Positions 9,632 to 63,676 of a stretch of DNA of 64,000 nucleotides are shown here, piece by piece. The notes under the pieces were generated by a model. That model had not been told where the DNA came from, ran no database searches, and was given only the letters and a program-made list of their open reading frames with translations. Both the position numbers and the translations under genes were made by a program. Position 1 is the stretch's first letter. Each line of letters starts with the position of its first letter. The stretch spans positions 1 through 64,000 of the IMG/VR virus record IMGVR_UViG_3300028558_000791, one strand, 5' to 3'.

Positions 9632-11242
9632 ATGTCTTCTGAAGAAACACTAATTCAAGTTCGCAAGGATAAGCACTTCGAACTTAATGGTGGAACTTAT
9701 CCATTGGCCAGTGAACCCAATGTTCTGCCATTCATTACGCATACTAATCTTCTAAGCATTCATCAAGCACTTTCTCTGGATGTTGCTTCTGGTAAGCTTC
9801 CAGTCAGCCTTGATCCCATAGAGTTGGGCGAGATGCGCAAGTACATTACTCGTGGCCGCATCACTGCCTTCCGTAAGTCAGGCGCTATTACTTTCATTCG
9901 ACTGACCGACTTTACTGGAACTCTTCAGGTCATTGTTAGTAAGGCTGCGTTTGATAATTACGCTAGCCTTAAGCTGTTTGATTTGGGAGACATCGTTGAG
10001 ATTGCGGGTCGCGGCTGTCTTTCTAAGACTGGAGAGATGTCATTGCTGGCTTTCCGTGTCACTCTTTTGACGAAGGCCCACCGACCTCCGCCTGAAAAGT
10101 TCCTTGGTATTGCTGATCAAGAGCTTCAGTATCGCAAGAGGTATCTTGACCTGATGTCTTCAGAAGAAACTCGCGCTCGTTTTACGGTGCGTACCTATGC
10201 TATCCGAGCTATCCGTGATTTCATGGAGAAGAATAGTTTCTTGGAAGTTGAGACTCCTACGCTCGGAGCTATTGCTAGCGGGGCAAATGCCAAGCCATTT
10301 ATTACGCATCACAATGCACTTGATATGGATATGCGTTTGAGAATTGCGCCGGAGCTTTATCTCAAGAGGCTTTTGGTTGGTGGTATGGATAGGGTGTTCG
10401 AGATTGGTCGAAACTATCGTAATGAAGGTATCGACACTCGACATAACCCCGAGTTTACTATGATGGAGAGCTACCAAGCCTATGGTAACTTTGAAGAACT
10501 CATCTCATTCACTACCAATCTTTTACAGAGCGTATCCTTATATTTAAGGGTGAATCTTCCAGCGCGAGCAATCGAATACTACAAGACGTGGGAGCAAGAA
10601 GCTACCTACGAGTTTTTCAATTTCGTACAAGTTCCCATGCTGAGTGCTGTGTTGAAGGCGGCTCTAAAGGCCGGCATCAACATTGAAATGGACGATCAGA
10701 ATCATAGTGTAGTAGTTACACATGATTTGCAGAATGCTAATGAACGACTTCAACAGATTGATGTGAAGTCTTTATGGCACGCTTTAGATCAAGCCACTAG
10801 CAATGGTGAGAGGATTGCCTCTTTGTTCGAGTATGTGGCAGAACCTTTTCTCACGGAAGATTATCGTAATGCTGATGGAACAAAGTCTGTTCCAGTTTTC
10901 ATTACGGAGTATCCAAAGGAAATTTCTCCACTAGCTAGGGCCAATGATAGTGACCCAGTTATCTGCGATCGATTCGAACTCTTTGTGGATGGAAGAGAGT
11001 TGGCCAACGCTTTCCAGGAACTCAATGATCCTGATGAGCAAGCACTTCGATTCCAAGAGCAACTGGATGCCAACAATAAGGATCCAATGGACTATGATGC
11101 TGACTATGTAGAGGCGTTGGAGCATGGCATGCCGCCCGCCATTGGGTTTGGTATTGGCATTGATCGTTTGATAATGCTTCTAACCAACACTACATCTATC
11201 AAAGATGTGATTCTATTTCCGACTCTAAAGACAGAGAAGTAA
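9632..11242 (+). CDS. lysS: Lysyl-tRNA synthetase, class II
   Basis: OB fold, YRKRYLDL, RIAPELYLKRL, YRNEGIDTRHNPEFT, GIGIDRL. Confidence 0.95.
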   Translation: MSSEETLIQVRKDKHFELNGGTYPLASEPNVLPFITHTNLLSIHQALSLDVASGKLPVSLDPIELGEMRKYITRGRITAFRKSGAITFIRLTDFTGTLQVIVSKAAFDNYASLKLFDLGDIVEIAGRGCLSKTGEMSLLAFRVTLLTKAHRPPPEKFLGIADQELQYRKRYLDLMSSEETRARFTVRTYAIRAIRDFMEKNSFLEVETPTLGAIASGANAKPFITHHNALDMDMRLRIAPELYLKRLLVGGMDRVFEIGRNYRNEGIDTRHNPEFTMMESYQAYGNFEELISFTTNLLQSVSLYLRVNLPARAIEYYKTWEQEATYEFFNFVQVPMLSAVLKAALKAGINIEMDDQNHSVVVTHDLQNANERLQQIDVKSLWHALDQATSNGERIASLFEYVAEPFLTEDYRNADGTKSVPVFITEYPKEISPLARANDSDPVICDRFELFVDGRELANAFQELNDPDEQALRFQEQLDANNKDPMDYDADYVEALEHGMPPAIGFGIGIDRLIMLLTNTTSIKDVILFPTLKTEK

Positions 11243-35712: not shown

Positions 35713-35787
35713 GCGCAACTCGACGACATCGGCATGTTTCGTTTCAATTTGTTGGGACTATTTCCCAAATATGGAAGGTGTATTATT

Positions 35788-37419
35788 ATGTCAAACAAGA
35801 ACTTATTCTCAAACAAGAACAAGCTAACGGTATCTGTTTCTAAGAAGGTAACTCTGCCAACCAACACGGTTAATGAGGCAGGTGGAACTGCATATAAGCT
35901 GTCCGACAAGGCTGCTTTGGCGCAGTACGCCATGACTGGTACGTTCAACGGTACATACTATGCATCCGATGCAGATCAACTTAAGAAGGTCCTTGAGTTG
36001 GCAAACAAGGTAGATCCAAAGTTCGTCGCTAAGCTGGCAGTGTACGCACGCCAGAGAGGCTTGATGAAGGATATGCCTGCCGTTCTTGCAGCCGTCATTG
36101 CTGGAAGAGACGCTGACCTATTGGCTACGATTTTCGATAGAGTAATCGACAATCCAAAGATGCTTCGTAACTTCGTTCAGATCATCCGATCTGGCGCAAC
36201 TGGCCGTAAGTCCTTGGGAACTCGCCCAAAGAAGTTGGTACAGAAGTATCTTGAGAACTTGACCGACGAGCAGTTGTTCAAGGCTGATGTTGGTAACGAT
36301 CCGTCGTTGCAGGACATCATCAAGTTGGTTCACCCAAAGCCAACTAACAAGCAGCGTTCTGCGTTGTACGGTTACTTGCTCGACAAGGAGTACAACAAGA
36401 GAGACCTCGTGTCTTTGGCACAACAGTTCGAAGCATTCAAGAAGGATATGAAGGGAGAGATCCCAGATGTTCCGTTCCAGATGTTGACGGCTCTGCCATT
36501 GACTGATACGCACTGGAAGCAGATTGCTGAGAATGCAACCTGGAACCAGATCCGTATGAACCTCAATACGTTTGCTCGTCACAACGTATTGGCTGACAAG
36601 AAGCTGGTCGATGTTTTGGCAGCAAAGCTATCGGACCCAGAGCAGGTCAAGCGTTCCAAGACGTTCCCATATCAGTTGTTCACCACTTACTTGAACGTGG
36701 ACGCCACGATTCCAAGCAAGCTGACGAACGCATTGCAAGATGCGGCTGATTCTTCTTTGGATAACATTCCTGAGTTCCCAGGAAAGGTCTTCGTAATGGT
36801 TGACACTTCTGGTTCTATGGGCTCTGCCGTCACCGGTAAGAGAGTAAATCCAAAGACTGGTAAGGAGGAATCCTTTACGACTAAGGCTCGATGCGTAGAC
36901 GTGGCAGCACTTTTCGCAGCAGCAATCTTGCGCAAGAATCCAGACACTGAGATTGTGCCATTCGACACCTCAGTACATGTTGGTCACCGATTCAATCCAC
37001 GTGATTCGATCATGACCAATGCAAAGACTCTAGCTTCATTCGGTGGTGGTGGTACCAACTGCTCCGCTGCTTTGGAGTATGTCAACAAAAAGGCTGGCAA
37101 GGGCGACCTTGTCATCTACGTGTCTGACAATGAGTCATGGGTTGATACGAAGGCATCTAACTCAGGTGTGTTCGGATACTACCGCCGTAATGGCACTGCC
37201 ACTATGGAAGAGTGGAATAAGTTCGCAGCCCGTAACAAGGGTGCAAAGCTTGTCTGTATCGACATTCAACCAAACTCCTCCACCCAAGCACACGACAGGG
37301 ATGACATCCTGAACGTGGGAGGATTCAGTGACCAGGTGTTCGATGTAATCGCAAGATTCGCCGAGCTTGGAAACAACAAGGATCTCTGGATCAAGACGAT
37401 CGAAGACGTCAAACTCTAA
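35788..37419 (+). CDS. rsr: Ro60 / TROVE domain RNA-binding protein (Rsr) with vWA domain
   Basis: NEAGGTAY, TGTFNGTYY, LVHPKP, RMNLNTFARH, MIDAS VDTSGSM, GGGTNCS, VSDNESW. Confidence 0.93.
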   Translation: MSNKNLFSNKNKLTVSVSKKVTLPTNTVNEAGGTAYKLSDKAALAQYAMTGTFNGTYYASDADQLKKVLELANKVDPKFVAKLAVYARQRGLMKDMPAVLAAVIAGRDADLLATIFDRVIDNPKMLRNFVQIIRSGATGRKSLGTRPKKLVQKYLENLTDEQLFKADVGNDPSLQDIIKLVHPKPTNKQRSALYGYLLDKEYNKRDLVSLAQQFEAFKKDMKGEIPDVPFQMLTALPLTDTHWKQIAENATWNQIRMNLNTFARHNVLADKKLVDVLAAKLSDPEQVKRSKTFPYQLFTTYLNVDATIPSKLTNALQDAADSSLDNIPEFPGKVFVMVDTSGSMGSAVTGKRVNPKTGKEESFTTKARCVDVAALFAAAILRKNPDTEIVPFDTSVHVGHRFNPRDSIMTNAKTLASFGGGGTNCSAALEYVNKKAGKGDLVIYVSDNESWVDTKASNSGVFGYYRRNGTATMEEWNKFAARNKGAKLVCIDIQPNSSTQAHDRDDILNVGGFSDQVFDVIARFAELGNNKDLWIKTIEDVKL

Positions 37420-37494: not shown

Positions 37495-37911
37495 ATGAAT
37501 AAGTTAGAAGATTTAGTGGCGGCAGCAAGACTAGCCGCCCAACATTCGTACAGTCCATACAGCAACTTCAAAGTTGCATCCGCCGTAGAAATGGAAGATG
37601 GAAGCATCTTTAGCGGCTCTAATGTAGAGAATGCGTCTTACGGTCTCACTATCTGTGCAGAGCGCAACGCAATCTTTCAAGCTGTGTCTAAGGGACATCG
37701 CCTAATAAAACGTATCATTGTCTACGCTCCTTCACCAACTGTTCGTACTGGCCCTTGTGGAGCCTGTAGGCAGGTAATTAAAGAATTTGCCGATGAATAT
37801 ACACTAATCATTGGCGCCTGTAACTCAGACGATATATTAACTTTTACAATGGAAGATTTGTTACCAAAGAGTTTTGGTCCCGATAATCTTCTAAAGAAAA
37901 GAAACCAATGA
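37495..37911 (+). CDS. cdd: Cytidine deaminase
   Basis: YSPYS, NVENASYGLTICAER, PCGACRQ. Confidence 0.93.
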   Translation: MNKLEDLVAAARLAAQHSYSPYSNFKVASAVEMEDGSIFSGSNVENASYGLTICAERNAIFQAVSKGHRLIKRIIVYAPSPTVRTGPCGACRQVIKEFADEYTLIIGACNSDDILTFTMEDLLPKSFGPDNLLKKRNQ

Positions 37912-38753
37912 TTAAGCGAAATGGCGTAGAGGTAATGAACGCCCGCACTAAAAACGTCTCTATTGCCAAAGAAACAATCGCTATAATCAACAACCAAAAA
38001 TACACCAATCTCAATGGAGATACAGTAGATATCTCAGTAGAAATGGATGCGGCCATAGACGGCACTCATTACTATGAGGCTGACGTTTTAGTCGGCATGC
38101 CCGCCGATCAGGCTCCCATTCACGCTACGATTGAGGTAGTAAATGAGACTACTGCTCAAGCTGCTGTTCGATTGCAAGCTAAAGGAAAAACTAATCTAGT
38201 TGCCCTTAACTTCGCTTCAGCGCGTAATCAAGGTGGAGGCTTTCTTTCTGGAGCTTTGGCTCAAGAAGAAGACTTGTGTAGGGCTTCTGGCCTATATGGT
38301 TGCCTGAAACGCAAACCATTGTTCTACAATGCAAACATCCTGTGTGACGATGCATTCTATACAAATGGAGTTCTCTACTCACCTAACGTTCCGTTCTTTA
38401 GGGATGATCATAATCTGTTTTTAGAGAAGCCTTTTCCGCTTTCTATCGTCTCAGCACCAGCTCCTAACCTTTCTAGCACCAAGTCGAACATCGACCCTAA
38501 AGTATTAACCTCTCTTATTAGAGAGCGTACTGTTAGGATTCTACAGGTGGCTCATGCCAATGGGCATAAGAACATCATTTTAGGTGCCTGGGGCTGTGGA
38601 GCCTTCGGAAATGATCCTGAAATGGTATCAAAAGCATTTATGTTGGCCCTAACTAAAGTTCCATATTTCGAGCATGTAACCTTTGCGGTATATGATACCA
38701 GAGAGCCGTACGTTTTATATGAAACGTTCAAAGAAGTCTGTAACGCTGTATAG
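37908..38753 (+). CDS. TIGR02452/DUF2263 bacterial-type poly(ADP-ribose) glycohydrolase
   Basis: LNFASA..GGGF..GALAQEEDLCRAS, LGAWGCGAFGN. Confidence 0.9.
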   Translation: MIKRNGVEVMNARTKNVSIAKETIAIINNQKYTNLNGDTVDISVEMDAAIDGTHYYEADVLVGMPADQAPIHATIEVVNETTAQAAVRLQAKGKTNLVALNFASARNQGGGFLSGALAQEEDLCRASGLYGCLKRKPLFYNANILCDDAFYTNGVLYSPNVPFFRDDHNLFLEKPFPLSIVSAPAPNLSSTKSNIDPKVLTSLIRERTVRILQVAHANGHKNIILGAWGCGAFGNDPEMVSKAFMLALTKVPYFEHVTFAVYDTREPYVLYETFKEVCNAV

Positions 38754-41561: not shown

Positions 41562-41644
41562 GGGGGAGTAGCTCAGCGAAAGAGCGCAAGGATACCGTAA
41601 GGAAAACCTTGAGGTCCCTGGTTCAATTCCAGGCTCCCCCACCA
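41562..41644 (+). ncRNA. tRNA-like RNA with 15-nt anticodon loop
   Basis: Intact acceptor, D and T arms plus ACCA; CAAGG-ATACCGTAAGGAAAA-CCTTG. Confidence 0.85.
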
Positions 41645-41708: not shown

Positions 41709-41784
41709 GGGACTGTAGCTCAGTGTTAGAGCGTCGGATTAAAAACCCGAAGGTCGCAGGTTCAACTCCTCGCCAGTCCCACCA
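41709..41784 (+). tRNA. Atypical tRNA, anticodon AAA (Phe)
   Basis: GGGACTG/CAGTCCC plus ACCA; loop TTAAAAA; bulged T stem. Confidence 0.7.
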
Positions 41785-41790
41785 TCTAAT

Positions 41791-41877
41791 CCCTCGTAAT
41801 TGGATCCGTGGGAGGATCTCCGGTCTGTAAAACCGGCGCCAATGTGCTAGGTAGTTCGATTCTACTGCGGGGGACCA
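41791..41877 (+). tRNA. 8/4-fold tRNA (allo-tRNA/Sec-like), anticodon GTA
   Basis: 8-bp acceptor CCCTCGTA/TGCGGGGG, 4-bp T stem, 6-bp D stem, CCGGT-CTGTAAA-ACCGG. Confidence 0.75.
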
Positions 41878-41967
41878 AACTGTAAGAGGAGCTTCGGCTC
41901 CAGTATTTATGCGGTACAAACCAACTAAGTATTTACAGTCTGTTCAATGACAACTTAATATTTGTTT

Positions 41968-43428: not shown

Positions 43429-43515
43429 TCTGTGGTAGCCTAATGGTAAGGCAGGTGGCTGTTAACCACCCGGTGGTAAAACACTTTCTAGGTTCGAGTC
43501 CTAGCTGCAGAGCCA
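43429..43515 (+). tRNA. tRNA-Asn(GTT) with long variable arm
   Basis: GGTGG-CTGTTAA-CCACC; V-arm GGTG-GTAAAA-CACT. Confidence 0.85.
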
Positions 43516-43982: not shown

Positions 43983-44411
43983 ATGTTTACTTCAACCGGA
44001 ATCCTTCAATATGATCCTGGTCAGGGTCTAAAACATTTCGATCCATGGTGGGCTCTTCTAGCCTGTGACGATGAAGTATCTAGGTATTATGCCTGGTTAC
44101 TAAAGAGACACGGAGTAGAAGTCTACCCTAACGATAAAGGGTTGTGGGGAACACACGTTTCAGTTTTGAAAGGTGCCGTCCCTCCCAATCAAGATAAGTG
44201 GGGCAAGTATCAAGACTTCGAAGTAGAAATCCATCTCAATCATCTTGTCCGTTATGATAACGGGAAACATGCTTGGGTAGATGTATACTCAGAAGATTTA
44301 TCAGCAATCCGACAGGAGTTAGGCTTCGATGCCAAGCCCTGGTACCATCTGACAATTGGTAGGTTGGTGAGACCATTTGATGTGGACTTTACCAAATATG
44401 GCATAACCTGA
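43983..44411 (+). CDS. 2H phosphoesterase family protein
   Basis: Two HxS/T motifs (THVSV, YHLTI) about 65 aa apart. Confidence 0.7.
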   Translation: MFTSTGILQYDPGQGLKHFDPWWALLACDDEVSRYYAWLLKRHGVEVYPNDKGLWGTHVSVLKGAVPPNQDKWGKYQDFEVEIHLNHLVRYDNGKHAWVDVYSEDLSAIRQELGFDAKPWYHLTIGRLVRPFDVDFTKYGIT

Positions 44412-44572: not shown

Positions 44573-44666
44573 CGATCACGCGTAGCTGGTTGCTCGGGCG
44601 AGACTTATAATCTTGCAAGGACTGATATTCCGTAACGGCAGGGTTCGATTCCCTGGTGATCGACCA
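44573..44666 (+). tRNA. Atypical tRNA-Ile(TAT), 6-bp anticodon stem, long variable region
   Basis: CGATCAC/GTGATCG plus ACCA; GCGAGA-CTTATAA-TCTTGC. Confidence 0.75.
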
Positions 44667-50072: not shown

Positions 50073-50149
50073 GGGTCTTTTGATGTAAAGGCTGGCCTCT
50101 AGACTTTAGTGCTAGAGGACATCGGGTTCGACTCCCGAATGATCCGCCA
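50073..50149 (+). ncRNA. tRNA-like RNA, no D stem, loop CT-TTA-GT
   Basis: GGGTC/GATCC plus GCCA; CCTCTAG/CTAGAGG; TCGGG-TTCGACT-CCCGA. Confidence 0.65.
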
Positions 50150-51442: not shown

Positions 51443-51516
51443 TCAGGAATCGTCTAATGGTAGGACGCGGGCCTTTGACTCCCGATATGCTGGTTCGAAT
51501 CCAGACTCCTGAGCCA
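51443..51516 (+). tRNA. tRNA-Gln(TTG)
   Basis: Loop CTTTGAC; T1-A72, G73. Confidence 0.9.
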
Positions 51517-56566: not shown

Positions 56567-56898
56567 ACATGAGCTTAGCTTGGTCAAAGGATATGGAATT
56601 GGATCCTGGTACGTTTGGAGGTTCTCCGGCATGCCATGTTTTAGTAGATATGATGAATCACAATGTTATTCCTATTATAGAGAAGCATCGTGTTTTATCA
56701 TTCATCAATGATGCTATCTATCAATTCAAGTGGTTATCCACTGTGAAGGAGTATGGCGTCAAGGAGAGGTCTATGGTTCTGATGAGGGACGATATTCTAT
56801 CTAGGGTGGATCATATGCCATATCCTGCCAAGTTTAATTCACATCTGAAGAACGTGATAACTCACCACTTCAGACGATACTTGAAAGAAGAGACCTAG
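56563..56898 (+). CDS. Hypothetical protein
   Basis: Packed ORF. Confidence 0.5.
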   Translation: MNMSLAWSKDMELDPGTFGGSPACHVLVDMMNHNVIPIIEKHRVLSFINDAIYQFKWLSTVKEYGVKERSMVLMRDDILSRVDHMPYPAKFNSHLKNVITHHFRRYLKEET

Positions 56899-57250
56899 AC
56901 AATCGCTCCCGTAAGGAGAGGAAAGTCGGAGCTACGTAGGGCAATTTGCTGGCTAACGGCCAGGCGCAGTGATGCGACAGATAGTGCAACAGAAAAGAAA
57001 CCGCCATGAATCCGCCAGGCCCGAAAGGGAGCAACGGTAGATGGTAAGGGTGAAATGGTGGGGTAAGAGCCCACCGCACCTATAGTGATATAGGTGGCAA
57101 GGTAAACCTCAGATGTAGCAAGCTAAATAGAGAGTGACTTGTCCGGTCAATACTCTCGGGTTAGTGCTGGAGCCATTAGGTAACTAACGGCCAAGATTAA
57201 TGATTGTCTCGATTTATAGACAGGACTCCGCTTATAGGGTGTCTTCTTTC
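56883..57250 (+). ncRNA. rnpB: RNase P RNA, bacterial type A
   Basis: GAGGAAAGTCGGAG, AGTGCAACAGAAA, GGGTGAAA..GGTAAGAG, GGTAAACC, ACAGGACTCCGCTTA; P1 GAAAGAAGA/TCTTCTTTC. Confidence 0.93.
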
Positions 57251-57276: not shown

Positions 57277-57966
57277 ATGACAAACAAAGTTACTACCGTG
57301 TCGGCTCGTGGATGTGTCGTGACAGATTACGATACTGCCACTTTTACCCTTTCCTTCAACGAATTCGCCCCTAAAGCGAAGGAAGCAAAGTTGAAGTTAA
57401 AGAAGGGTGCGTCTAAAATTACTGCCGCCCTTGATGAACTCAAGAAGAGGGGCTTGGAGTTTTTGACCAACAACTACCGCTCTAACATTTCGGTTGCTCC
57501 GAATTATGTTTATGACCGTACCAATGGTGTAAACCGAATGGAAGGCCAAAAGGCTACCTATTCCGTTACTTTCCAGACTCCCACATTGGAGATGGTCAAT
57601 GAAGCATATGATGTGCTTTCTGAGTTGGAAGTAAATGAATACACGGTTAACTCCCCAACCTACTCTGTTAGGGCTGAGGCGCAATTCAAACAACAGGCAT
57701 TGGAAGATGCTTGGAAGGTAGCGCAAGTATTGTTTGCTCACCAGTGCAAAACGCTTGGGTTTGAAGCAGACAAGTTCTCTGTGGATAGCTGGCAGGTAAA
57801 CTACAGCGGTCGTGACCATGGTGGTTTCTCTAAGGGAGCTAACTATACTAACGGTCTCGCTGGTGGTAGCGCAGGCGGTAGTGAAGATGACGCCATCGAG
57901 TTGAATGCTGGTCGTGCAGCTATCGATGTCATCCTTACTGTAGATTACGTTCGTACCGGATCATGA
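57277..57966 (+). CDS. SIMPL (DUF541) domain protein
   Basis: Paralog of 55844-56566; ALEDA, PNYVY. Confidence 0.7.
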   Translation: MTNKVTTVSARGCVVTDYDTATFTLSFNEFAPKAKEAKLKLKKGASKITAALDELKKRGLEFLTNNYRSNISVAPNYVYDRTNGVNRMEGQKATYSVTFQTPTLEMVNEAYDVLSELEVNEYTVNSPTYSVRAEAQFKQQALEDAWKVAQVLFAHQCKTLGFEADKFSVDSWQVNYSGRDHGGFSKGANYTNGLAGGSAGGSEDDAIELNAGRAAIDVILTVDYVRTGS

Positions 57967-58607
57967 AAATCAAACTTGCCTACCCCAAGATTCCCGATAC
58001 ACTAGACTGTCCACTCAAGCAGTGTATTGCATTTGAGAAGTATGATGGAACCAATATCCATTGGACTTTCATGCCGGGTGAGGGGTGGCAAGACTACGGT
58101 GCTCGACGTGACAGATATGCCATCAATACAACTGGTGTTAGAGCCTTTGAGGAAGCGCATCCAGAGTTGAAGGGTGTCCATACTCTATGGGATCAAAAGG
58201 ATCTTCTAAATGATTTCCTTAATGAGAATCCTAAATACAATACTGCTAAAGAAATTATTGTATTCACTGAGTATCTTGGACCCCATTCTTTTGCAGGTCA
58301 ACATGACCCGAAAGATGTTATCAAGCAATTAATTATATTTGATGTCCAAGTTGATGGGAGCTTAATTCCTCCTGAACAATTTGTAGAAGACTTCAAACAA
58401 TTCAATATTGCGAGAGTTGTCTTCCAAGGAAAGTTTTCTGGCCAACTCTTCGTAGATGTTCGAAAAGGCAAGTACGATGTCAAAGAAGGGGTAGTAGTTA
58501 AGGGCATTTACAACAATCAAATCTATATGGCTAAGATTAAGACTGAAGCCTATATGGAACGATTGAAGAACGAATTCAAAGATAATTGGAAAGAATATTG
58601 GGAATGA
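57963..58607 (+). CDS. RNA ligase (Rnl2-like adenylation domain)
   Basis: Motif I EKYDGTN, FTEYLG, IFDV, EGVVVK, AKIK. Confidence 0.8.
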   Translation: MKIKLAYPKIPDTLDCPLKQCIAFEKYDGTNIHWTFMPGEGWQDYGARRDRYAINTTGVRAFEEAHPELKGVHTLWDQKDLLNDFLNENPKYNTAKEIIVFTEYLGPHSFAGQHDPKDVIKQLIIFDVQVDGSLIPPEQFVEDFKQFNIARVVFQGKFSGQLFVDVRKGKYDVKEGVVVKGIYNNQIYMAKIKTEAYMERLKNEFKDNWKEYWE

Positions 58608-62755: not shown

Positions 62756-63676
62756 ATGAATAAGATTGCAACATTAGTAGGATGTGCCATTGGAGATGCT
62801 CTTGGCAATCCATTTGAGATGTGGAGTGTCCATGAGCCCAAGCTTAAAGAGTGGGATGGTCAGTTCAAAGCTGGCGGTACTTTCTGGGTAGGAGAGGCCG
62901 GACAATATACCGATGATACCCTAATGAGCCTTGCTTTGTCATATTCTTTGCTTGAGAAGAGCGGATTCGATCAAGAGCACGTAGGTCTTCAGTACTTGGC
63001 TTGGATGGAGTCTGGTAACACTCGCGGTATTGGCGGGACTACTCACAGAGCTTTGACACGAATGAAGAACGGAGCATCCGCTCTTGAGAGTGGTGTTACC
63101 CATAACGATGGCAAGCCTGCCTCTGGTAATGGAACTGCTATGAGAGCCACACCAATTGGCCTCTGGTACCGTAAAGATATCGGCAAGTTGATTGAGGTTG
63201 CAATGGCGGACGCATCCATCACTCATAATTCATTTGAACCCAAGATGGGTTCTGTGGCGGTTGCACTAGGTACTGCATTGATTGCTAATGGTGCAACTGA
63301 CATGATTGAGGTCTTAGAAGAGGTAGCTGAGGTAATCTCTGAATCTATTGTCAAAGAGAAGTTAGTATTGGCCTTAACCCATCTAAAACTGGGTACCGAA
63401 CATTTTGAGGCCCTTGCGCAGATCGGCGTCAATGGCTATGTTCCAGAGACGGTTGGCGCGGCATTCTATTGTTTAGGGGCCAACGCAAACTATAGAGATA
63501 CTGTAGTGTTAGCTGTCAAGGCTGGCGGAGATACTGATACCACTGCGGCGATTGCTGGTGGCATGGCTGGTACTTTATACGGACTTGATGGTATTCCATT
63601 AGAATATAAGGATAAAGTAGAGAATTTCGAGTTATTGCAATCATTGACTGATGAACTTGTCAATAATGAGATATAA
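62756..63676 (+). CDS. ADP-ribosylglycohydrolase (DraG/ARH family)
   Basis: GDALG, YTDDT, GNGTAMR, GGDTDT. Confidence 0.93.
   Translation: MNKIATLVGCAIGDALGNPFEMWSVHEPKLKEWDGQFKAGGTFWVGEAGQYTDDTLMSLALSYSLLEKSGFDQEHVGLQYLAWMESGNTRGIGGTTHRALTRMKNGASALESGVTHNDGKPASGNGTAMRATPIGLWYRKDIGKLIEVAMADASITHNSFEPKMGSVAVALGTALIANGATDMIEVLEEVAEVISESIVKEKLVLALTHLKLGTEHFEALAQIGVNGYVPETVGAAFYCLGANANYRDTVVLAVKAGGDTDTTAAIAGGMAGTLYGLDGIPLEYKDKVENFELLQSLTDELVNNEI

What the first reader, a model, noticed from the sequence alone, without database searches (positions are those of the whole stretch)
41791..41877. 8/4-fold tRNA with Sec-like 6-bp D stem and GUA anticodon
Seen: 8-bp acceptor, 4-bp T stem, D stem GGATCC/GGATCT, canonical anticodon arm (GTA) and A73. 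Known: 8/4 and 9/3 folds define allo-tRNAs, whose amino-acid identity can differ from the anticodon. Inference: possible mistranslating or nuclease-resistant tRNA.
Basis: partly seen in the sequence, partly recalled or inferred. Interest (0 to 1): 0.7.

Follow-up and report, generated by a model that had tools for sequence, protein, structure and literature searches.

The report
Phage tyrosine tRNA with 8/4 fold
This is a real, conserved tyrosine tRNA of a half-megabase soil phage whose acceptor helix has 8 base pairs and whose T stem has 4 (normally 7 and 5); it extends to tyrosine a rare tRNA shape so far reported only for a few other tRNAs, and it sits in a phage that also carries its own tyrosyl-tRNA synthetase.

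Summary
Window 41791-41877 (+) is an 87-nt tRNA with anticodon GUA, A73 and an encoded CCA. It has an 8-bp acceptor stem, a 4-bp T stem and a 14-nt variable arm.

Comparison, not a single fold, settles the 8/4 split. In 22 distinct relatives the eighth acceptor pair is always Watson-Crick (G-C 13, A-U 6, U-A 3). In the 17 closest, the rival fifth T-stem pair is G·U in 6 and unpaired in 11.

The "Sec-like 6-bp D stem" is only partly right. Five pairs and a 6-nt loop are conserved; the sixth pair (G·U here) is not.

The window is the start of a 480,838-bp phage with 57 tRNAs, a tmRNA and an RNase P RNA. This is its only tRNA-Tyr, and the phage encodes an intact bacterial-type TyrRS.

Relatives occur only in phages, including cultured Pseudomonas phages and Pseudomonas prophages that lack a TyrRS. 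Sister huge phages carry an ordinary 7/5 tRNA-Tyr at the same spot.

Most likely it is a working tyrosine tRNA, not an allo-tRNA-style mistranslator. Whether the shape gives nuclease resistance, or the C1-G72 pair makes it private to the phage TyrRS, is plausible but untested. I class it as a new member (tyrosine) of the known 8/4 phage tRNA kind.

The parts
41791..41877 (+). Whole 87-nt 8/4 tRNA-Tyr(GUA) gene, CCA encoded
   Evidence: ARAGORN. Own covariance model R1 scores 103.8 bits. Covariation.
41791..41798 (+). 5' strand of the 8-bp acceptor stem (CCCTCGTA); C1 pairs with G at 41873 (C1-G72 in standard numbering)
   Evidence: All 8 pairs are counted. Six of the 8 show compensatory changes. 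Pair 5 is often a mismatch in relatives.
41799..41802 (+). Connector ATTG, 4 nt (canonical tRNAs have 2). A9 is invariant. G12 can pair with U29 in this copy only.
   Evidence: Alignment A1.
41803..41818 (+). D arm: 5-bp stem GATCC/GGATC around the 6-nt loop GTGGGA, which holds the invariant GG
   Evidence: stem 100% paired; pair 16:25 shows C-G, G-C, U-A and U-G. Different stems with the same shape occur in the Pseudomonas phage relatives.
41820..41836 (+). Anticodon arm: 5-bp stem, loop CTGTAAA, anticodon GTA at 41827-41829
   Evidence: 4 of 5 pairs have compensatory changes.
41837..41850 (+). Long variable arm, 14 nt (CGCCAATGTGCTAG), with a short 2-3 bp stem. Its sequence differs from the host-type variable arm.
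   Evidence: Host Pseudomonas tRNA-Tyr for comparison.
41851..41865 (+). T arm: 4-bp stem GTAG/CTAC and loop TTCGATT
   Evidence: 100% paired.
41866..41873 (+). 3' strand of the acceptor stem (TGCGGGGG). U at 41866 pairs with A8 at 41798.
   Evidence: Pair 8:78 in alignment columns is G-C 13, A-U 6, U-A 3.
41874..41877 (+). Discriminator A73 and encoded CCA
   Evidence: Invariant in all 22 sequences.
41888..41908 (+). Conserved trailer: hairpin GGAGC-TTCG-GCTCC followed by AGTATTT, 11 nt after the CCA. Probably a processing or termination signal.
   Evidence: Unique in the window. Present with compensatory changes after the tRNA-Tyr of most sister phages shown, including two of the four with a 7/5 tRNA-Tyr.
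41709..41784 (+). tRNA-Phe(AAA) 6 nt upstream, in the same tRNA array (context, not part of the tRNA-Tyr)
56887..57250 (+). Phage-encoded bacterial class-A RNase P RNA. It is the enzyme type that would cut the 5' leader of the array's tRNAs (context).
   Evidence: Rfam RF00010, 272.5 bits. Conserved in sister phages G002 and G004.

Best explanation
It is a functional tyrosine-accepting elongator tRNA of a roughly 0.48-Mb soil or rhizosphere phage, built on an 8/4 scaffold instead of the usual 7/5.

The coaxial acceptor/T helix keeps its normal total of 12 bp. The T loop and the D-loop GG are normal, so RNase P, EF-Tu and the ribosome should still accept it (inferred).

It carries the bacterial tyrosine identity set (G34-U35-A36, A73, long variable arm). 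It is most likely charged with tyrosine by the phage's own bacterial-type TyrRS (G000 125685-126902, outside the window) and reads UAU/UAC as tyrosine during infection.

Shown: the fold, its conservation under selection, its restriction to phages, the co-occurrence with a phage TyrRS, and positional equivalence to ordinary tRNA-Tyr genes in sister phages.

Inferred: charging with tyrosine, use in translation, and any advantage of the shape.
For: Fold:
- 22/22 relatives keep pair 8:76, using three Watson-Crick types. The rival 7/5 pair is unpaired in 11 of the 17 closest relatives.
- RNAalifold and the single-sequence minimum-energy fold both give 8/4.

Selection:
- 98.5% of cells are paired and 12 of 24 pairs show compensatory change. 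No shuffle reached the observed covariation score, and shifted registers fall to 35-47% paired.

Tyrosine identity:
- GUA, A73 and a long variable arm are invariant.
- It is the only tRNA-Tyr among the 57 tRNAs ARAGORN finds in the phage.
- Model R1 finds no second copy in G000, G002 or G004.
- The phage encodes a TyrRS: TIGR00234 at 378 bits, an S4-like C-terminal domain, and HVGH and KMGKT motifs.
- All three records that hold both regions (G000, G002, G004) have both genes.

Orthology:
- In sister phages, the same place after the cytidylyltransferase-like gene holds an ordinary 7/5, G1-C72 tRNA-Tyr, with the same 5' leader and, in two of them, the same trailer hairpin.

Compatibility with normal charging:
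- G1-C72 versions of the 8/4 tRNA occur in cultured Pseudomonas phages and in prophages that have no TyrRS gene.
- The Pseudomonas genomes carrying such prophages keep a canonical 7/5 tRNA-Tyr of their own.
- In phage UAVern the GenBank record annotates it as tRNA-Tyr.
Against: - There is no expression or aminoacylation data. No RNA run holds this phage.
- C1-G72 is the archaeal/eukaryal rather than the bacterial tyrosine pair. From memory of the TyrRS literature, bacterial TyrRS disfavours it, so charging efficiency is uncertain.
- The 4-nt connector and the missing nucleotide 26 are unusual. Their effect on the tertiary fold is unknown.
- Parts of the alignment (D arm, anticodon loop, start of the variable arm) are invariant because the search pattern fixed them.
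- The sequences are related, so the covariation counts are not independent events.
Confidence: 0.75

Rival explanations
1. Defence-evading spare part. The 8/4 scaffold, with its different D arm and variable arm, is a phage design that keeps tyrosine identity but is not recognised or cut by host antiphage nucleases that destroy the host tRNA-Tyr. This would keep UAY decoding alive during infection. It adds a reason to the main explanation rather than excluding it.
For: - The family was found only in phages and prophages. The D-arm pattern had no match in representative genomes of 185,579 prokaryote species. The only genome hits for the second pattern lie next to phage head genes.
- It differs from the co-resident host tRNA-Tyr in every arm except the anticodon loop, T loop and A73.
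- RNA-repair genes surround the array: an RNA ligase, a weak 2H phosphoesterase match (below Pfam's cut-off) and Ro60.
Against: - No nuclease and no cleavage data exist for these hosts.
- Sister huge phages manage with a canonical 7/5 tRNA-Tyr.
- In T6 and SP15, escape works through tRNA dosage rather than resistance.
- The shape may be neutral drift fixed in one lineage and spread between phages.
Confidence: 0.35
2. Private pair. In the huge phages the flip to C1-G72 makes the tRNA a poor substrate for the host TyrRS, so that it is charged mainly by the phage TyrRS. That would make a naturally host-orthogonal TyrRS:tRNA pair.
For: - 15 of the 17 huge-phage-type sequences have C1-G72.
- All three records known to hold a phage TyrRS have C1-G72.
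- All five complete or near-complete phages and proviruses without a TyrRS have G1-C72.
- Phage aaRS:tRNA pairs that are orthogonal in E. coli have been reported for TrpRS (PMC12636597).
Against: - The numbers are small and the cases are phylogenetically linked.
- Two huge-phage-type sequences (L049, L050) keep G1-C72.
- The residues that I recall from the B. stearothermophilus literature as facing the acceptor end are not strikingly changed. N146 and W196 are kept, and the acidic residue at 152 is kept as E or D across 120 phage TyrRS sequences.
- The benefit to the phage is unclear.
Confidence: 0.3
3. Allo-tRNA-like mistranslator. The tRNA is charged with serine or leucine through its long variable arm and inserts the wrong amino acid at UAY codons.
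For: It has an 8/4 fold and a long variable arm like allo-tRNAs. A73 together with a long arm is also found in tRNA-Leu.
Against: - A73, not the G73/U73 of most allo-tRNAs.
- The variable-arm stem is only 2-3 bp.
- It is the sole tRNA-Tyr of a phage with a near-complete tRNA set and a TyrRS.
- It replaces a normal tRNA-Tyr positionally.
- The GUA anticodon is invariant in all 22 relatives, whereas allo-tRNA anticodons are highly diverse.
Confidence: 0.05
4. Non-translating decoy or decayed gene. It is a tRNA-like RNA that binds a host factor (a nuclease or TyrRS) without being used in translation, or it is a decaying pseudogene with a chance fold.
For: - Standard tRNA finders score it poorly (Rfam below threshold) or miss relatives altogether.
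- The array also contains clearly odd tRNA-like genes.
Against: - Pairing is kept in 98.5% of cells, with compensatory changes in every stem that varies.
- The anticodon loop, T loop, GG, A73 and CCA are intact.
- The family is conserved from 40-kb prophages to 0.5-Mb phages.
- A pseudogene would not keep this. A pure decoy would not need an invariant anticodon.
Confidence: 0.05

Closest known systems
[quoted passage not shown] 2017, NAR, PMC5389517)
   Same: Phage-borne tRNAs within tRNA gene clusters. A 12-bp acceptor branch split 8+4. The anticodon matches the presumed amino-acid identity.
   Different: Tyrosine was not among the reported identities (no mention in the main text; supplements not held). 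Here the D arm is 5 bp plus a 6-nt loop. Most copies have C1-G72, and the phage also encodes the matching synthetase.
Allo-tRNAs (8/4 or 9/3; Mukai et al. 2017)
   Same: 8/4 acceptor branch, long variable arm, lengthened D stem, and best Rfam match to the tRNA-Sec model.
   Different: A73 instead of G73/U73. A 5-bp rather than a longer anticodon stem. A hexaloop rather than a tetraloop D loop. An invariant cognate anticodon rather than diverse non-serine anticodons. No sign of serine identity.
Canonical bacterial class II tRNA-Tyr (e.g. the Pseudomonas host copy in L080)
   Same: GUA anticodon in a CUGUAAA loop, A73, long variable arm, normal T loop, encoded CCA, 85-87 nt.
   Different: The host copy is 7/5 with a 3-bp D stem, an 11-nt D loop, U8 and G1-C72. 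The phage copy is 8/4 with a 5-bp D stem, a 6-nt loop, a 4-nt connector, a different variable arm and, in this copy, C1-G72.
Bacterial tRNA-Sec
   Same: 8-bp acceptor stem, extended D stem, long variable arm.
   Different: tRNA-Sec has a 13-bp branch (8/5), a 6-bp D stem with a tetraloop and a UCA anticodon. Here the branch is 12 bp and the anticodon is GUA. RF01852 scores 25.1 bits, below its gathering score of 47.
Phage tRNA-Tyr genes that counter retron-Eco7 and Septu (T5, SP15, T6; PMC11555353, PMC13096335)
   Same: A phage-encoded tRNA-Tyr whose variable arm differs from the host's.
   Different: Those are drawn as ordinary cloverleaves. No 8/4 fold is reported for them, and no defence link has been shown for the present family.

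Membership tests
8/4 tRNAs (12-bp acceptor branch split 8+4) | Eighth acceptor base pair maintained | tested here: met
   Pair 8:76 is G-C 13, A-U 6, U-A 3 in 22 of 22 sequences.
8/4 tRNAs (12-bp acceptor branch split 8+4) | T stem of only 4 bp; the fifth (49:65) pair is not maintained | tested here: met
   The four pairs are 100% paired. The would-be fifth pair is G·U in 6 and unpaired in 11 of 17.
8/4 tRNAs (12-bp acceptor branch split 8+4) | Works in translation | not testable with these tools
   No RNA data. Inferred from intact loops and conservation.
Allo-tRNA (Mukai 2017) | Discriminator G73 or U73, as in most allo-tRNAs (serine identity) | tested here: not met
   A73 is invariant. Definition.
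Allo-tRNA (Mukai 2017) | tRNA-Sec-like D arm: long stem with tetraloop | tested here: not met
   5 conserved bp plus a 6-nt loop. The sixth pair forms in 8 of 17 (my count on the alignment).
Allo-tRNA (Mukai 2017) | Anticodon stem longer than in canonical tRNAs | tested here: not met
   5 bp. U29 and C47 cannot pair.
Allo-tRNA (Mukai 2017) | Long variable arm | tested here: met
   13-16 nt in all members, though the stem is short.
Bacterial tRNA-Tyr | GUA anticodon, A73, long variable arm | tested here: met
   Invariant in 22 sequences.
Bacterial tRNA-Tyr | G1-C72 first pair | tested here: not met
   C1-G72 in this copy and in 15 of 17 huge-phage relatives. G1-C72 in L049, L050 and in four of the five Pseudomonas prophage-type sequences added (G·A in L075).
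Bacterial tRNA-Tyr | Charged by TyrRS with tyrosine | not testable with these tools
   A cognate-type TyrRS is encoded by the phage. There is no biochemical test.
tRNA-Sec (RF01852) | Reaches the family's covariance-model threshold; UCA anticodon; 13-bp branch | tested here: not met
   25.1 bits against a gathering score of 47. Anticodon GUA. 12-bp branch.

The most novel reading that the evidence does not exclude
The 8/4 tRNA-Tyr is a phage-specific scaffold selected because it escapes host nucleases that kill infection by cutting tRNA-Tyr. In the half-megabase phages it has gone a step further. By flipping the first pair to C1-G72 it has become a private substrate of the phage's own TyrRS, which would make a natural, host-orthogonal bacterial-type TyrRS:tRNA pair on a non-canonical scaffold.
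Probability: 0.2. Interest if true: 0.8.

Novelty: new member of a known kind. Interest (0 to 1): 0.55.

Why it matters
- Natural 8/4 tRNAs are rare, and the paper that defined them describes 8/4 forms of the cognate tRNAs for Ser, His, Cys and Sec. A tyrosine member shows that the class II tyrosine system tolerates the 8/4 geometry.
- The family spans 40-kb prophages to 0.5-Mb phages and occurs in cultured Pseudomonas phages (UAVern, ventosus). The fold, charging and any anti-defence role can therefore be tested directly at the bench.
- It is under-annotated. ARAGORN misdraws or misses relatives, and the GenBank record of phage ventosus has no feature there. Phage tRNA censuses therefore undercount it.
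- The pairing of a C1-G72 8/4 tRNA with a phage bacterial-type TyrRS is a candidate natural orthogonal pair of interest for genetic-code engineering.

Tried and rejected
- A 7/5 fold with a G·U fifth T pair. Rejected by covariation.
- A conserved 6-bp Sec-like D stem. Rejected: the outer pair is not conserved.
- tRNA-Sec membership. Rejected.
- ARAGORN's 8/4 drawing as evidence. Not reliable: it draws the ordinary tRNA(UUA) at 50073-50149 the same way, although that tRNA has a good 7/5 fold.
- Other 8/4 tRNAs in this phage. None is clear among the 57. tRNA-Gln(UUG) at 51443-51516 is ambiguous.
- BLAST of the tRNA against GenBank phages. Nothing for the huge-phage type.
- Testing whether sister phages with a 7/5 tRNA-Tyr also have a TyrRS. 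Those contigs are 10-21% fragments, so the result is uninformative. TyrRS-bearing fragments G001, G003 and G005-G007 lack the tRNA-Tyr region.
- Looking for adaptive changes at TyrRS residues facing the acceptor end. N146 and W196 are kept, the acidic 152 is kept, and K151 is replaced by an Arg one position earlier throughout the phage clade. This is not informative, and the residue roles are from memory.
- Expression. No RNA runs hold the phage.
- The 5' leader motif TTGTCRGYTAT seen in relatives is absent from this window. Here the tRNA follows tRNA-Phe directly.
- Supplementary files of Mukai 2017 are not held, so I cannot exclude that an 8/4 tRNA-Tyr appears there.

Full report
**What is at the coordinates**

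Window 41791-41877 (+) reads CCCTCGTA-ATTG-GATCC-GTGGGA-GGATC-T-CCGGT-CTGTAAA-ACCGG-CGCCAATGTGCTAG-GTAG-TTCGATT-CTAC-TGCGGGGG-A-CCA.

ARAGORN calls it tRNA-Tyr(GUA), 87 nt. Rfam's general tRNA model does not reach its threshold here. The best match is tRNA-Sec at 25.1 bits, below its gathering score of 47.

In this single sequence, however, U76 could pair either with A8 (an 8/4 fold) or with G60 (a 7/5 fold with a G·U pair). The sequence alone cannot decide. The minimum-energy fold is the 8/4 cloverleaf, but its z-score of -1.16 is unremarkable.

**Where it lies**

The window is the first 64 kb of a 480,838-bp virus record. ARAGORN finds 57 tRNAs and a tmRNA in that genome, in several arrays. 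The window also holds a bacterial class-A RNase P RNA at 56887-57250 (272.5 bits).

Around the array are RNA-repair and ADP-ribose genes:
- a Ro60/TROVE protein
- PARG
- a weak 2H-phosphoesterase match (20.7 bits, below Pfam's cut-off of 27)
- an RNA ligase
- an ADP-ribosylglycohydrolase

The finding is the only tRNA-Tyr in the genome. At 125685-126902, outside the window, the phage encodes a bacterial-type TyrRS. It scores 378 bits against TIGR00234 and has an S4-like C-terminal domain and HVGH and KMGKT motifs. A TrpRS lies next to it.

The phage occurs in rhizosphere and soil metagenomes. No RNA run holds it.

**Relatives and the fold**

Related huge phages were reached in two ways: through the TyrRS and through the cytidylyltransferase-like gene just upstream of the array. 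They carry homologues of this tRNA.

A pattern built on the D arm and anticodon loop then found 4 viral contigs and 22 metagenome contigs. These gave 17 distinct full-length sequences.

On that alignment the 8/4 structure performs as follows:
- 98.5% of cells are paired.
- 12 of 24 pairs show compensatory change.
- No shuffle reached the observed covariation score.
- Shifted registers fall to 35-47% paired.

The decisive pair 8:76 is G-C in 8, A-U in 6 and U-A in 3. The competing fifth T-stem pair is G·U in 6 and unpaired in 11. RNAalifold predicts the 8/4 fold without guidance.

The acceptor columns and the 3' strand of the T stem were not part of the search pattern, so their covariation is not an artefact of selection. 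The invariance of the D arm, the anticodon loop and the start of the variable arm is partly by construction.

**Correction on the D stem**

The conserved D stem is 5 bp (GATCC/GGATC, GATGC/GCATC, GATTC/GAATC) around a 6-nt loop that holds the invariant GG. A 4-nt connector and a single nucleotide before the anticodon stem complete an unusual core.

**A wider family, and its hosts**

A second pattern, built on the variable and T arms, found an 84-85-nt sister group in 40-60-kb viral contigs and in two Pseudomonas genomes. A covariance-model search of 151 sampled genomes of that genus found a third.

In P. trivialis the gene lies beside another tRNA gene or two and phage head genes (Mu F-like, portal), so it is in a prophage.

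BLAST then found relatives in cultured Pseudomonas phages. In UAVern (MZ605293.1) it is annotated tRNA-Tyr. In ventosus (MG018930.1) it is not annotated at all. Two further hits, phiK7A1 and vB_PF_Y1-MI, were not examined.

All the members examined fold 8/4. Their acceptor stems are GCYGACUG paired with CRGGCRGC (one copy, L075, ends in A). Their T stems are GUGG/CCAU or GAGG/CCUU. Their 5-bp D stems have wholly different sequences (GUGCG/CGCAC, AGUUG/CAACU, CCACG/CGUGG) around the same CUGGGA loop.

With the five distinct prophage-type sequences added, pair 8:76 holds in 22 of 22.

Further points on distribution:
- These smaller phages have no TyrRS gene.
- The two Pseudomonas genomes I checked keep a canonical 7/5 tRNA-Tyr with a 3-bp D stem and a different variable arm.
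- The D-arm pattern has no match in representative genomes of 185,579 prokaryote species.
- So far the family is confined to phages.

**Why I read it as a tyrosine tRNA**

- GUA, A73 and the long variable arm are invariant across the family.
- It is the phage's only tRNA-Tyr, and the phage carries the cognate enzyme type.
- Sister huge phages have an ordinary 7/5, G1-C72 tRNA-Tyr at the same place, with the same 5' leader. Two of them (L024, L025) also share the trailer hairpin, and most are followed by tRNA-Pro.
- G1-C72 versions live in phages that must rely on the host TyrRS.

Allo-tRNAs in the sense of Mukai et al. differ. Most have G73 or U73, and they have a tetraloop D arm, a longer anticodon stem and highly diverse anticodons. 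This RNA shares only the 8/4 split and the long arm. The same paper reports 8/4 tRNA-Ser and tRNA-His in phages, which are the closest precedent. I found no report of a natural 8/4 tRNA-Tyr, but that paper's supplements were not available to me.

**Why this shape, and why C1-G72**

These questions remain open. Two ideas fit the data.

First, tRNA-Tyr is a documented target of antiphage nucleases. Retron-Eco7 and Septu cut its variable loop, and T5's tRNA-Tyr resists through a distinct variable loop. A phage-only tRNA-Tyr that differs from the host copy everywhere except in identity elements fits that theme.

Second, C1-G72 is found in 15 of 17 huge-phage-type sequences, including all three genomes known to carry a phage TyrRS. 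All TyrRS-less phages keep G1-C72. That pattern would fit a pair private to the phage. The sample is small and the cases are not independent. A look at TyrRS residues near the acceptor end showed nothing telling.

Neither idea can be decided by sequence.

**Verdict**

The mistranslation reading is unlikely. Nuclease resistance and orthogonality are live but untested.

This is a new, tyrosine member of the known 8/4 phage tRNA kind. It is conserved from prophages to half-megabase phages, it is poorly caught by tRNA finders, and it can be tested directly in cultured Pseudomonas phages.

Noticed in passing
window 56887-57250 (+); also G002 58158-58489 and G004 36384-36715: A full-length bacterial class-A RNase P RNA is encoded by the phage, inside the tRNA-rich region, and is conserved in two sister huge phages (271-280 bits). 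A literature search turned up no report of a phage-borne RNase P RNA.
   Followed up: partly
window 35734-37419 (+) and 41562-41641 (+): A Ro60/TROVE plus vWA protein lies about 4 kb upstream of the array. The first array member is a tRNA-like gene with a 15-nt anticodon loop (Rfam tRNA 54.7 bits, not called by ARAGORN). It could be an intron-bearing tRNA or a Y-RNA-like or decoy RNA.
   Followed up: no
window 43429-43515, 44573-44666, 41709-41784 (+): Other odd tRNAs: an 87-nt tRNA-Asn(GUU) with a long variable arm, a 94-nt tRNA-Ile(UAU) with a very large variable region, and a tRNA-Phe with anticodon AAA and an irregular T arm. The long tRNA-Asn and the 94-nt tRNA-Ile recur in sister phages (L018-L021).
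   Followed up: no
window 50073-50149 (+); G000 172924-172997 and 173183-173255; G000 170047-170403: Suppressor-type tRNAs are present: anticodon UUA in the window and two CUA outside it. There is also a tmRNA. I did not test whether the phage recodes a stop codon. ORFs in the window look normal under table 11.
   Followed up: no
window 41888-41908 (+): A UUCG-capped hairpin (GGAGC/GCUCC) followed by AGTATTT lies 11 nt after the tRNA-Tyr. It is unique in the window and recurs, with compensatory changes, after the tRNA-Tyr of most sister phages compared, including two of the four whose tRNA-Tyr is 7/5.
   Followed up: partly
window 37908-38753, 43983-44411, 57963-58607, 62756-63676 (+): PARG, a weak 2H-phosphoesterase match (below Pfam's cut-off), an RNA ligase and an ADP-ribosylglycohydrolase are interleaved with the tRNA genes. 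This looks like an RNA-repair and ADP-ribose-reversal toolkit.
   Followed up: no
L078 1468-1551 (MG018930.1, about 9993-10076); L072 6449-6533 (-): The 8/4 tRNA-Tyr is not annotated in the GenBank record of Pseudomonas phage ventosus. ARAGORN does not detect it in the Pseudomonas prophage or provirus loci scanned. In huge-phage relatives ARAGORN calls a shifted 83-nt gene with mismatches.
   Followed up: yes
window 51443-51516 (+): tRNA-Gln(UUG) has mismatches at 7:66 and 49:65, but U8 could pair with A65. It might therefore be another 8/4-like tRNA. This rests on a single sequence and was not tested by comparison.
   Followed up: no
acceptor pair 5:68 of the family (window 41795 with 41869): The fifth acceptor pair is C-G here but is a mismatch (A·G, A·C, A·A or C·A) in 10 of 22 relatives, including all the Pseudomonas phage and prophage copies. 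It looks like a conserved internal mismatch of unknown meaning.
   Followed up: partly
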